Positions 50,718 through 51,890 of a DNA stretch of 64,000 bases are shown here, piece by piece. The stretch is from contig NC_087248.1 in the NCBI RefSeq assembly GCF_037042905.1, positions 17,360,001 through 17,424,000 of the forward strand. Direction: 5' to 3'. The stretch is from Lytechinus pictus. Its lineage: Eukaryota. Positions within the stretch are counted from its first letter, which is position 1, and each line of letters starts with the position of its first letter. The position numbers were made by a program, and so were the translations under genes. Below the pieces are notes generated by a model. It made no database searches, was not told the DNA's origin, and saw nothing but the letters and a program-made list of their open reading frames with translations.

Positions 50718-51658
50718 TACATGTGTCATATCATAGAGTGGACTGACTGGCTGTCCAATGGCAGAACAAATCCCTGTCTTTAAAGCTTTCTAAGAATCTC
50801 TCGAATGGCCTACTGTACATCTCCTCCTTGTACCTTTAGATTACCCTTCATGTGTCATAGCATGAAGTGGATTGACAGGATGTCTAACAGCAGAATGACC
50901 CTTTGTCTTTTAAATTCTCTAAGAACCTCTAGGATGGCATCCCTGAACCACTGGATTGCCCTACATATGTCATAACATAGAGTGGACTGACTGGCTGTCT
51001 AACGGAAGACCAACAACACCATATCTTTAAAGTTCTTTAGGTGTGCCTACTCTAAGTCTGAAGATAGCCTTACATGTGTCATCACATAGAGTGGACTTAC
51101 TAGCTGTCTTAAAGCATGAGACCCTGTCTTTGAAGTTCTCTATGAATCTCTAGTGGTGCCTGACATGAATCTCAGGATTGCCCTACTTGTGCCATAACAA
51201 TGAGTGGACCAACTAGCTGTCTAACGAAAGAACTACACCCTGTCTTTGAAACTCTGTAAGAACCTCTAGGATACCCCACTAAACCTCTGGATTGCCTGCA
51301 TGTGTCATAACATAGAGTGGACCGACTGGCACTCTAACAAATGAACAACACCATGTCTTTGAAGTTCTTTAGTTGGACCTACTCTAATCCTGAAGATAGC
51401 CCTACGTGTGTCATCACATAGAGTGGACCGACTGGCTGTCTAACGGAAGAACTACACCTTGTCTTTGAAGCTCTCTAAGAACCTCTAAGATAGACTCTAG
51501 CTATACCCTAAACCTAAGGATTACCCTACATATGTCATAACATAGAGTGGACTGACTGGCTGTCTAAAGGAAGAACTACACCTTGTCTTTGAAGCTCTCT
51601 AAGAACCTCTAAGATAGACTCTAGCTATACGCTAAACCTAAGGATTACCGTACATGTG
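50718..51658 (-). repeat. Eight degenerate tandem copies (106-129 bp) of the CEP162 terminal coding segment plus stop codon, in the 3' UTR
   Basis: The core CATGTGTCATAACATAGAGTGGACTGACTGGCTGTCTAA...CCTTGTCTTTGAAGCTCTCTAAGAACCTCTA recurs with stop-equivalents at 51535, 51411, 51305, 51192, 51079, 50970, 50855 and 50726, and matches the real CDS end at about 51659-51770. Confidence 0.93.
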
Positions 51659-51890
51659 TCATAACATAGAGTGGACTGACTGGCTGTCTAAAGGAAGAAC
51701 TACACCTTGTCGTTGAAGCTCTCTAAGAACCTCTAGGATGGCCTCCAGCTCAACTCGGAACCTCTGAATCTCCATGTTCTTGGATGCAACAAGCCCTTTG
51801 AGAGTCAAGATCTCTTGGTCCTTCTCTGAAGTAGCACTGTGAGTAGCTCTCTCCACCAAGAGTTGTAGGTCTTTGTCACGTTGGATATGT
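51659..51890 (-). CDS. CEP162: CEP162 last coding exon (TGA at 51661-51659)
   Basis: ttcctag acceptor. HIQRDKDLQ...[30 protein letters not shown] resembles human [30 protein letters not shown]. Confidence 0.95.

What the first reader, a model, noticed from the sequence alone, without database searches (positions are those of the whole stretch)
50718..51775. CEP162 has re-copied its own C-terminal coding end and stop codon eight times into the 3' UTR
Seen: the unit is the last ~38 codons, the TGA and about 10 nt of UTR. The nearest copy still translates [35 protein letters not shown] versus the true [36 protein letters not shown]. Stop-to-stop spacings are 124, 124, 106, 113, 113, 109, 115 and 129 bp, and divergence generally increases with distance from the gene. 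Copies at 51305/50970 and 51411/51079 share diagnostic variants, revealing a ~333-bp higher-order duplication. The proximal spacings are not multiples of 3, and readthrough stops after six codons, so this is not a protein repeat. Inference: a polarised array growing from the coding end that records past C-termini; unequal crossover or gene conversion could swap the protein tail, and the repeated core may multiply RNA-binding-protein or miRNA sites.
Basis: partly seen in the sequence, partly recalled or inferred. Interest (0 to 1): 0.72.

Follow-up and report, generated by a model that had tools for sequence, protein, structure and literature searches.

The report
CEP162 coding tail repeated in 3'UTR
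The last ~38 codons and the stop codon of this animal's CEP162 (cilium/centriole) gene are repeated eight more times, in decaying form, inside the transcribed 3' untranslated region. It is most likely a tolerated minisatellite kept partly fresh by exchange with the coding copy, and similar stop-spanning repeats occur at the same gene in several other animals.

Summary
Observation confirmed. The minus-strand last exon of CEP162 (51890-51659, TGA 51661-51659) is followed by eight head-to-tail, decaying copies (106-129 nt; 51650-50718). Each copies the last 37-38 codons, the stop and about 8 nt. Spacings are exactly as reported.

- The unit occurs nowhere else in the 811-Mb genome.
- The copied peptide is the conserved extreme C-terminus of CEP162 from molluscs to vertebrates, so the coding copy is the source.
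- Spliced RNA contigs and strand-specific reads place the array in the mRNA 3'UTR (~1.8 kb, ending by the only AATAAA).
- A related species' DNA carries U3- and U8-type units.
- There is no smooth age gradient. U1/U2 are mosaics re-homogenised with the coding copy (2/85 versus 15/39 differences), U3/U6 pair, and the rest are 66-82% alike.
- I found no protein repeat, no conserved RNA fold and no splicing into the array.

Unexpectedly, stop-spanning tandem copies of the same coding end occur in 7 of 30 CEP162 lineages sampled (periods 44-172 nt), against 3.6% of control windows.

Best reading: a tolerated, self-renewing 3'UTR minisatellite anchored on a constrained coding unit; function is unproven. 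The scan noted the same architecture at other genes of this genome (ELMO, SHCBP1, RGP1).

The parts
51659..51890 (-). Last coding exon of CEP162 (76 full codons plus stop; TGA at 51661-51659); first base completes a codon from the previous exon
   Evidence: Translation. Spliced RNA joint 51890->52618 in three runs. The peptide aligns to the extreme C-termini of 1283-1576-aa proteins named CEP162.
51651..51774 (-). U0, the coding master unit (last 37-38 codons, TGA and 8 nt)
   Evidence: Unit alignment. Carries the conserved motif [25 protein letters not shown].P.
51527..51650 (-). U1, 124 nt, a mosaic unit. Its 5' 39 nt are of the 3'UTR type (15/39 differences from U0); its 3' 85 nt are almost identical to U0 (2/85)
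51403..51526 (-). U2, 124 nt, 94% identical to U1; a mosaic like U1 (15/39 versus 5/85 differences from U0)
51297..51402 (-). U3, 106 nt. Shares a 23-nt deletion with U6; a U3-type unit is also present in the related species
   Evidence: Joint 51691->51380 in X11.
51184..51296 (-). U4, 113 nt, stop position decayed (TGG)
51071..51183 (-). U5, 113 nt; its end shares the GTGATGA variant with U2
50962..51070 (-). U6, 109 nt, partner of U3 (85% identity; tree support 99/97)
50847..50961 (-). U7, 115 nt, old unit
50718..50846 (-). U8, 129 nt, the most distal unit. Present next to the same downstream flank in the related species (6 differences in 146 nt)
   Evidence: X11 record 9.
49876..50717 (-). 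Rest of the 3'UTR, non-repeated except for a dispersed element at about 50076-50363. The likely 3' end is near 49876
   Evidence: RNA contigs 50328-50845 and 49876-50357. The only AATAAA after the stop is at 49898-49893.
49893..49898 (-). AATAAA, the probable polyadenylation signal
   Evidence: RNA contig X1 record 1 ends 17 nt downstream, at 49876.
52618..52670 (-). Penultimate coding exon (…MKHFEALQAKIVALESR…)
   Evidence: Joints 51890->52618 and 52670->53566 in X21, X1 and X5. ORF listing.

Best explanation
**What it is.** This is a transcribed 3'UTR minisatellite. It arose by tandem duplication of a ~124-nt segment that spans the CEP162 stop codon.

**Why it is tolerated (inferred).** The first stop codon is kept, so the protein is unchanged and the duplication carries no cost to it.

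**How it evolved (partly shown).**
- The array was then expanded and remodelled by unequal exchange or slippage; this step is inferred.
- Its 3'UTR units decay freely, with in-frame stops, indels and 66-85% identity. This is shown.
- The coding unit is held constant by selection on the conserved centriole-targeting C-terminus.
- That constant unit repeatedly re-seeds or converts the neighbouring units. U1 and U2 are chimeras of a 3'UTR-type 5' part and a coding-type 3' part, which is shown. The array is therefore self-renewing and long-lived, which is inferred.

**Function.** No function of the copies is required by the data.
For: - **Exact repeat anatomy**.
- **Unit unique to this locus** in the genome.
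- **The coding copy is the source.** Its peptide is the conserved extreme C-terminus of CEP162 in molluscs, a hemichordate, a crinoid, a frog and a bowfin. The precomputed Pfam family CEP162_C sits on the closest relatives.
- **The array is in the mRNA**.
  - Contigs of two independent studies are spliced at 51890->52618 and 52670->53566.
  - They also cover 50974-51474 and 50328-50845 without a single difference.
  - Raw stranded reads lie on one strand only.
  - Read depth over the array is exon-like, while unique intron bins have depth 0.
- **Mosaic U1/U2.** 15/39 versus 2/85 differences from U0, permutation p<1/3000.
- **Single clade.** All nine units form one clade at 100/100.
- **Older than the species split.** U3-type and U8-type units are in the related species' DNA.
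- **Minisatellite-rich genome.** Five other arrays of 89-172-nt period lie in this 64-kb window.
- **Same architecture elsewhere.** The scan noted it at other genes of this genome (not tested here).
- **No conserved RNA structure.** Consensus fold -3 kcal/mol, with an unfavourable covariation term.
Against: - **Recurrence at the same gene.** Stop-spanning tandem copies occur in 7 of 30 sampled lineages, against 3.6% of control windows. This is more than a purely neutral, gene-blind process predicts.
- **Uneven decay within the unit.** For the old units U3-U8, the 26 nt around the stop differ from U0 at 8%, against 39% in the first 44 columns.
- **Slow change between species.** U8 differs less between the two species (6/146) than neighbouring non-coding DNA (76/817), p=0.04.

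These patterns could reflect conversion tracts, but they could equally reflect constraint on the copies.
Confidence: 0.68

Rival explanations
1. The array is functional. The terminal coding segment carries a cis-acting RNA (or DNA) element, and extra copies in the 3'UTR are favoured because they multiply binding sites for a protein or small RNA. They would be more accessible there than inside the translated region.
For: - Independent-looking arrays of the same coding end, with periods of 44, 50, ~99, ~120, 124, ~152 and 172 nt, occur in 7 of 30 lineages. Control windows give 11/304. Binomial p is 8e-5, or 0.015 if the window's clade is counted once.
- The stop-spanning core is strongly conserved in the old units.
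- U8 is conserved between the two species.
- The array is transcribed in the sense orientation.
Against: - No conserved secondary structure.
- Unit boundaries differ between lineages, and most lineages (23 of 30) have no copy.
- The copies carry indels and decay.
- Old units are closer to U0 than to each other in the tail (14% versus 22.5%). That is what free decay from a static master predicts.
- No binding factor is known.
- The sampled lineages are not all independent.
Confidence: 0.2
2. Reverse direction: a pre-existing satellite or dispersed repeat was captured as the end of the coding sequence.
For: All eight 3'UTR units resemble each other more than they resemble U0 in their 5' 40 nt.
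Against: - The peptide encoded by U0 is the conserved CEP162 C-terminus across phyla.
- The unit and its core occur only here in the genome.
- Units U7 and U8 keep U0-like sequence in the 5' part.
Confidence: 0.02
3. The copies are used for protein: alternative last exons, readthrough or frameshift extensions, or small ORFs.
For: - U1 keeps an open frame for the last 29 codons.
- The copy in relative L009 keeps an open frame, with 7 of 9 differing codons synonymous.
Against: - Readthrough stops after six codons.
- The 124-nt period is not a multiple of 3.
- The 5' parts contain stops.
- Only the two canonical junctions were seen, and none runs into the array (depth is low).
- L009 ends in a double stop.
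- The synonymous excess is what a constrained master copy produces.
Confidence: 0.03
4. Assembly artefact (a falsely expanded repeat).
For: None found.
Against: - Units differ by 6-34%.
- RNA contigs from two studies match 501 and 518 nt of the array exactly.
- A related species has the units.
Confidence: 0.01

Closest known systems
3'UTR minisatellites / VNTRs (for example the 40-bp VNTR in the 3'UTR of human SLC6A3; from general knowledge, not tested here)
   Same: Head-to-tail units of tens to about 100 nt inside a transcribed 3'UTR. They are generated and remodelled by slippage or unequal exchange. Effects on the mRNA are possible but usually weak.
   Different: Here the unit is the gene's own terminal coding segment including the stop codon. 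The first unit is coding and constrained. Copy-number polymorphism was not tested.
Concerted evolution of tandem arrays by gene conversion or unequal crossing-over (rDNA, snRNA arrays; general knowledge)
   Same: Neighbouring units are homogenised. There are mosaic units with a sharp breakpoint, and copies cluster by species in the tree.
   Different: Homogenisation is local, affecting only the two units next to the coding copy. It is directional in effect, because one unit is frozen by protein selection while the rest decay.
Other stop-spanning arrays noted by this scan in the same genome (ELMO s1-327685, SHCBP1 s1-327708, RGP1 s1-324914, s1-320132)
   Same: The last codons plus the stop codon are amplified into the 3'UTR. 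Follow-ups reported them as transcribed, shared with a sister species and probably by-products.
   Different: These are different genes and units, and I did not check them. For CEP162 I additionally found the same kind of array in other, distant lineages.
Internal tandem duplications of C-terminal coding exons (for example BCOR ITDs, PMC4660214, seen)
   Same: Tandem duplication of a C-terminal coding segment.
   Different: Those are in-frame, somatic and change the protein. Here the duplication includes the stop, is germline and old, and leaves the protein unchanged.

Membership tests
CEP162 (C-terminal region; Pfam CEP162_C PF27882) | Conserved C-terminal motif (EL..[20 protein letters not shown].P) at the extreme end of a ~1300-1570-aa coiled-coil protein | tested here: met
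   phmmer gave 84 hits. The full-length ones align at their last ~70 residues and are named CEP162 in Mya, Argopecten, Glandiceps, Antedon, Rhinoderma and Amia. Nine columns are invariant.
CEP162 (C-terminal region; Pfam CEP162_C PF27882) | Direct match to the Pfam model | tested here: inconclusive
   My hmmscan of the exon against the local Pfam copy gave no family. PF27882 is listed only as a precomputed hit on the relatives P0001-P0003 and P0106-P0108. The local library may predate the model.
CEP162 (C-terminal region; Pfam CEP162_C PF27882) | Exon is spliced to upstream coiled-coil exons of the same gene | tested here: met
   Joints 51890->52618 and 52670->53566 in RNA runs. The upstream exon motif MKHFEAL matches that of the relatives.
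Minisatellite / VNTR | Head-to-tail tandem units of about 10-150 nt in several copies | tested here: met
   Nine units of 106-129 nt.
Minisatellite / VNTR | Copy number varies between individuals | not tested
   De Bruijn contigs break inside the array. No joint that changes copy number was listed for organism A. Long genomic reads are needed.
Higher-order repeat | Blocks of several units are more alike at the block period than adjacent units are | tested here: inconclusive
   True for U3/U6 and the ends of U2/U5 (85-88% at an offset of 332). Not true for U4/U7 or U5/U8 (73%).
Protein tandem repeat | Units in frame and translated | tested here: not met
   The stop is retained in U0. The 124-nt period is not a multiple of 3. 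Readthrough ends after six codons.
Dispersed repeat / transposable element | Copies elsewhere in the genome | tested here: not met
   All 8 DNA matches and all 7 core matches lie in this array. Caveat: the tool states that its counts are lower bounds.

The most novel reading that the evidence does not exclude
The end of the CEP162 coding sequence is a recurrent hotspot for stop-spanning tandem amplification across animal lineages. At least four independent origins are implied, with unit lengths from 44 to 172 nt. The reason would be that this RNA or DNA segment has a cis-acting role, or a locus-specific mutational bias. The 3'UTR copies would then be maintained rather than merely tolerated.
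Probability: 0.25. Interest if true: 0.65.

Novelty: new member of a known kind. Interest (0 to 1): 0.42.

Why it matters
**As a single locus** it is a clean, well-documented example of how a tandem duplication that includes the stop codon is invisible to the protein and can grow into a transcribed 3'UTR array. The constrained coding unit acts as a permanent template that keeps the array recognisable. It also preserves at least one older synonymous state of the gene.

**The broader point** is that the same kind of array sits behind the same gene in several distant animals. According to the scan's notes, it also sits behind several other genes of this genome. That makes a testable class. Are stop-spanning arrays simply what selection lets through in minisatellite-rich genomes, or do some coding ends carry RNA elements whose multiplication is useful?

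Tried and rejected
- **Pfam scan** of the last exon and four upstream exon ORFs gave nothing relevant.
- **RNAalifold** on the nine units found no meaningful structure.
The nearest outgroup could therefore not be examined.
- **TRF missed the decayed copies in L023**; blastn found them.
- **Literature searches** found no description of this array or of stop-spanning arrays as a class. The library is limited.
- **Rejected readings:** capture of a pre-existing repeat, protein repeat or readthrough, alternative terminal exons, and assembly artefact (see rivals).
- **Spacer homology.** Homology of the post-stop spacers between lineages could have shown a single ancient origin, but it was too weak to call.
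- **The 3' end is inferred.** No poly(A) tails or read pile-ups were seen in the ribo-depleted reads (table 6). The 3' end rests on a contig end 17 nt past the only AATAAA.

Full report
**1. The observation**

On the minus strand, an exon begins after a polypyrimidine-AG at 51890 and ends with TGA at 51661-51659. It translates to [76 protein letters not shown].

A 26-nt anchor that spans the stop occurs nine times, with 0-5 mismatches. TRF and the repeat finder see the same array.

I cut nine units. U0 (51774-51651) is coding, and U1-U8 run down to 50718.

The unit is not dispersed. A 241-nt query and the 26-mer core (up to 3 mismatches) match only this array in the 811-Mb genome. The tool warns that its counts are lower bounds.

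**2. Which copy is the source**

The 76-residue exon peptide was scored against 1.84 billion representative proteins. It gave 84 hits. The full-length ones (1283-1576 aa) align at their very last residues. Their sources call them centrosomal protein of 162 kDa, in Mya, Argopecten, Glandiceps, Antedon, Rhinoderma and Amia.

The alignment shows the motif EL..[20 protein letters not shown].P with nine invariant columns. According to a review, the third coiled coil at the C-terminus of CEP162 binds the distal centriole (PMC12017076).

The coding unit is therefore ancestral and constrained, and the eight units behind it derive from it. The reverse reading, capture of an existing repeat, is excluded.

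My own Pfam scan found nothing. The family CEP162_C appears only as a precomputed label on the relatives.

**3. Is the array in the mRNA**

One call laid four runs on 49500-53800.

- Contigs of two studies of the same organism (X1, X5) and raw stranded RNA reads (X21) show the joints 51890->52618 and 52670->53566. The first has GT..AG ends on the gene strand. The second lies within 1 nt of a GTAAGT donor. The X1 and X5 runs are therefore RNA.
- The same runs hold contigs 50974-51474 (501 nt) and 50328-50845 (518 nt in X1) with no difference from the window.
- Raw reads over the array lie in one orientation only. Their depth is 0.3-4.8, comparable with the exons (about 2). Unique intron bins have depth 0 in all three RNA runs.
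- The low depth over U0-U1 is expected, because their 3' parts are nearly identical.
- After the stop there is no AATAAA or ATTAAA until 49898-49893. One RNA contig ends at 49876.

The 3'UTR is therefore about 1.8 kb, and its first 941 nt are the array. No read pile-up or tail marks the end, so the 3' end is inferred.

**4. Structure and history of the array**

Pairwise identities:

| Pair | Identity |
|---|---|
| U1/U2 | 94% |
| U0/U1 | 86% |
| U0/U2 | 84% |
| U3/U6 | 85% |
| all others | 66-82% |

Identity to U0 for U1 to U8 is 86, 84, 72, 81, 74, 75, 77 and 77%. That is two tiers, not a gradient.

*Mosaic units.* U1 and U2 are mosaics. Against U0 they have 15 differences in the first 39 positions, but only 2 (U1) or 5 (U2) in the remaining 85. 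The maximum chi-square permutation p is below 1/3000 for U1 and 0.0007 for U2. Their 5' parts are of the type shared by all 3'UTR units. An unequal exchange between the coding unit and a 3'UTR unit, or a conversion tract from the coding unit, produces exactly such a chimera next to the gene. This step is inferred from the pattern.

*Partial higher-order repeat.* U3 and U6 share a 23-nt deletion and pair in the tree at 99/97. The ends of U2 and U5 share a variant. U4/U7 and U5/U8 are at background. The 333-bp higher-order repeat is therefore only partly supported.

*One fossil state.* All eight 3'UTR units have AGA where U0 has CGA (both arginine). The relatives' coding sequences have AGA or AGG.

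*Uneven decay within the unit.* For the old units U3-U8, divergence from U0 varies along the unit:

| Part of unit | Divergence from U0 |
|---|---|
| first 44 columns | 39% |
| middle | 23% |
| last 45 columns | 14% |
| 26-nt anchor | 8% |

In the last 45 columns the old units are closer to U0 (14%) than to each other (22.5%). That is what free decay from a static master gives. In the 5' part they share derived states.

No conserved RNA fold exists.

**5. Related species**

DNA contigs of a second organism (X11, sharing about 12% of 31-mers, which implies roughly 6-7% divergence) lie on the array at 80% likeness.

- One contig covers U8 and its downstream flank, with 6 differences in 146 nt.
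- One contig joins U3-type sequence to a unit tail.
- The contig of the last exon breaks at 51678, where the repeat begins.

The array, with already differentiated unit types, therefore predates the split of the two species.

U8 differs less between the species than neighbouring non-coding DNA (6/146 against 76/817, p=0.04). This is a weak hint only.

**6. The unexpected part: the same thing in other lineages**

Last-exon ORFs of relatives were found on metagenome and run contigs. Where DNA was served, I compared the last 130 coding nt plus 10 nt with the downstream DNA.

| Locus | Post-stop copies |
|---|---|
| L009 | One copy at 90%, period 172; contig ends inside it; 7 of 9 differing codons synonymous |
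| L010 | One frameshifted copy at ~75%, period ~152 |
| L016 (sister of L010) | The orthologous copy plus the start of another |
| L017 | Two copies plus the start of a third, period ~99 |
| L023 | Two decayed copies at ~72-75% |
| L025/L026 | 50-nt array of 10.3 copies, starting in the last 11 codons |
| L018 | 44-nt unit, three copies across the end of the ORF; it contains GTAAGT and may be an exon border |

L009, L010, L016 and L017 are 61-65% identical to this window's exon in protein and are saturated at third codon positions. L022-L054 came from a scan of metagenome contigs.

After merging loci at 88% nucleotide identity, 7 of 30 lineages are positive. Of control 140-nt windows in the same loci, 11 of 304 (3.6%) have a nearby direct copy. 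The binomial p is 8e-5. If the four echinoderm-like lineages are counted as one event (4 of 27), p is 0.015.

In a joint tree the copies group with their own species' coding unit; the window's nine units form a clade at 100/100. Given saturated synonymous sites between lineages, the copies are either younger than the lineages or kept similar by exchange with the coding unit.

Caveats:
- The lineages are unnamed and not all independent.
- Many of the negatives are close relatives of each other.
- The control windows are mostly non-coding.

**7. Context**

This 64-kb window holds five other minisatellites of 89-172-nt period, so the genome makes such arrays readily.

Earlier notes of this scan are unchecked by me. 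They say the genome is a sea urchin (Lytechinus pictus). They list the same architecture behind ELMO, SHCBP1, RGP1 and one more gene. The follow-ups judged those arrays transcribed, shared with a sister species and probably by-products.

**8. Verdict**

The best explanation (0.68) is a tolerated 3'UTR minisatellite born from a stop-spanning tandem duplication, anchored on a coding unit that selection freezes and that re-homogenises its neighbours.

A functional reading, multiplication of a cis element carried by the coding end, keeps about 0.2. It rests on the recurrence at this gene, the conserved stop-spanning core and the low between-species change of U8. None of these is decisive.

- **Shown:** the anatomy, the source, uniqueness in the genome, transcription, the mosaic units, age relative to the sister species, and occurrence in other lineages.
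- **Inferred:** the exchange mechanism, neutrality, and the poly(A) site.

Noticed in passing
window 51948-52235 (last intron of CEP162): A short element with terminal inverted repeats (…GGGGCCCGTAACACAAAG … CTTTGTGTTACGGGACCC…). Its summed depth is enormous in all four runs, on both strands. It is a dispersed MITE-like repeat that is abundant in both species.
   Followed up: no
window 52812-53243 and 50076-50363: Further dispersed repeats, with depth hundreds to thousands of times that of the flanks and reads on both strands. One of them lies inside the CEP162 3'UTR downstream of the array.
   Followed up: no
window 51693 (+ strand G>T; codon CCT>CAT on the gene strand): RNA contigs carry a variant that changes the nearly invariant proline of the ...QGVVLP... 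motif to histidine. It accounts for all depth in X5 and 15.3 of 39.3 in X1. The hemichordate orthologue also has His at this position.
   Followed up: partly
window 50131-50995: A second, divergent haplotype appears in the RNA contigs (X5 record 16, X1 record 3). It differs by about 5-8% and has the stretch 50535-50639 replaced or too diverged to align.
   Followed up: no
window 36411-37485; 16162-16833; 11264-11606; 28365-28589; 28896-29072: Five other minisatellites with periods of 89-172 nt. The first has 8.4 copies of 126 nt with 259- and 385-nt higher-order periods. This genome is rich in such arrays.
   Followed up: no
L009:495-608: The post-stop copy of the CEP162 coding end in this relative keeps an open frame over 37 codons. 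Seven of the nine differing codons are synonymous. This is compatible with a constrained master plus a young copy, but it is worth checking for use as coding sequence.
   Followed up: partly
L025:773-1274 and L026:1200-1330: A 50-nt array of 10 copies begins within the last 11 codons of another animal's CEP162. TRF also reports 149- and 199-nt higher-order periods.
   Followed up: partly
L018:893-1001: A 44-nt unit is repeated three times across the end of the CEP162_C ORF. Each copy contains GTAAGT, so a splice donor may be repeated with it. The called product reads through a TGA.
   Followed up: no
window 62910-63600: A long ATC/CAT-type triplet repeat flanks an N gap (63031-63269) next to a CEP162-like coiled-coil exon. 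The ORF listing shows poly-Asp/His/Met frames there.
   Followed up: no
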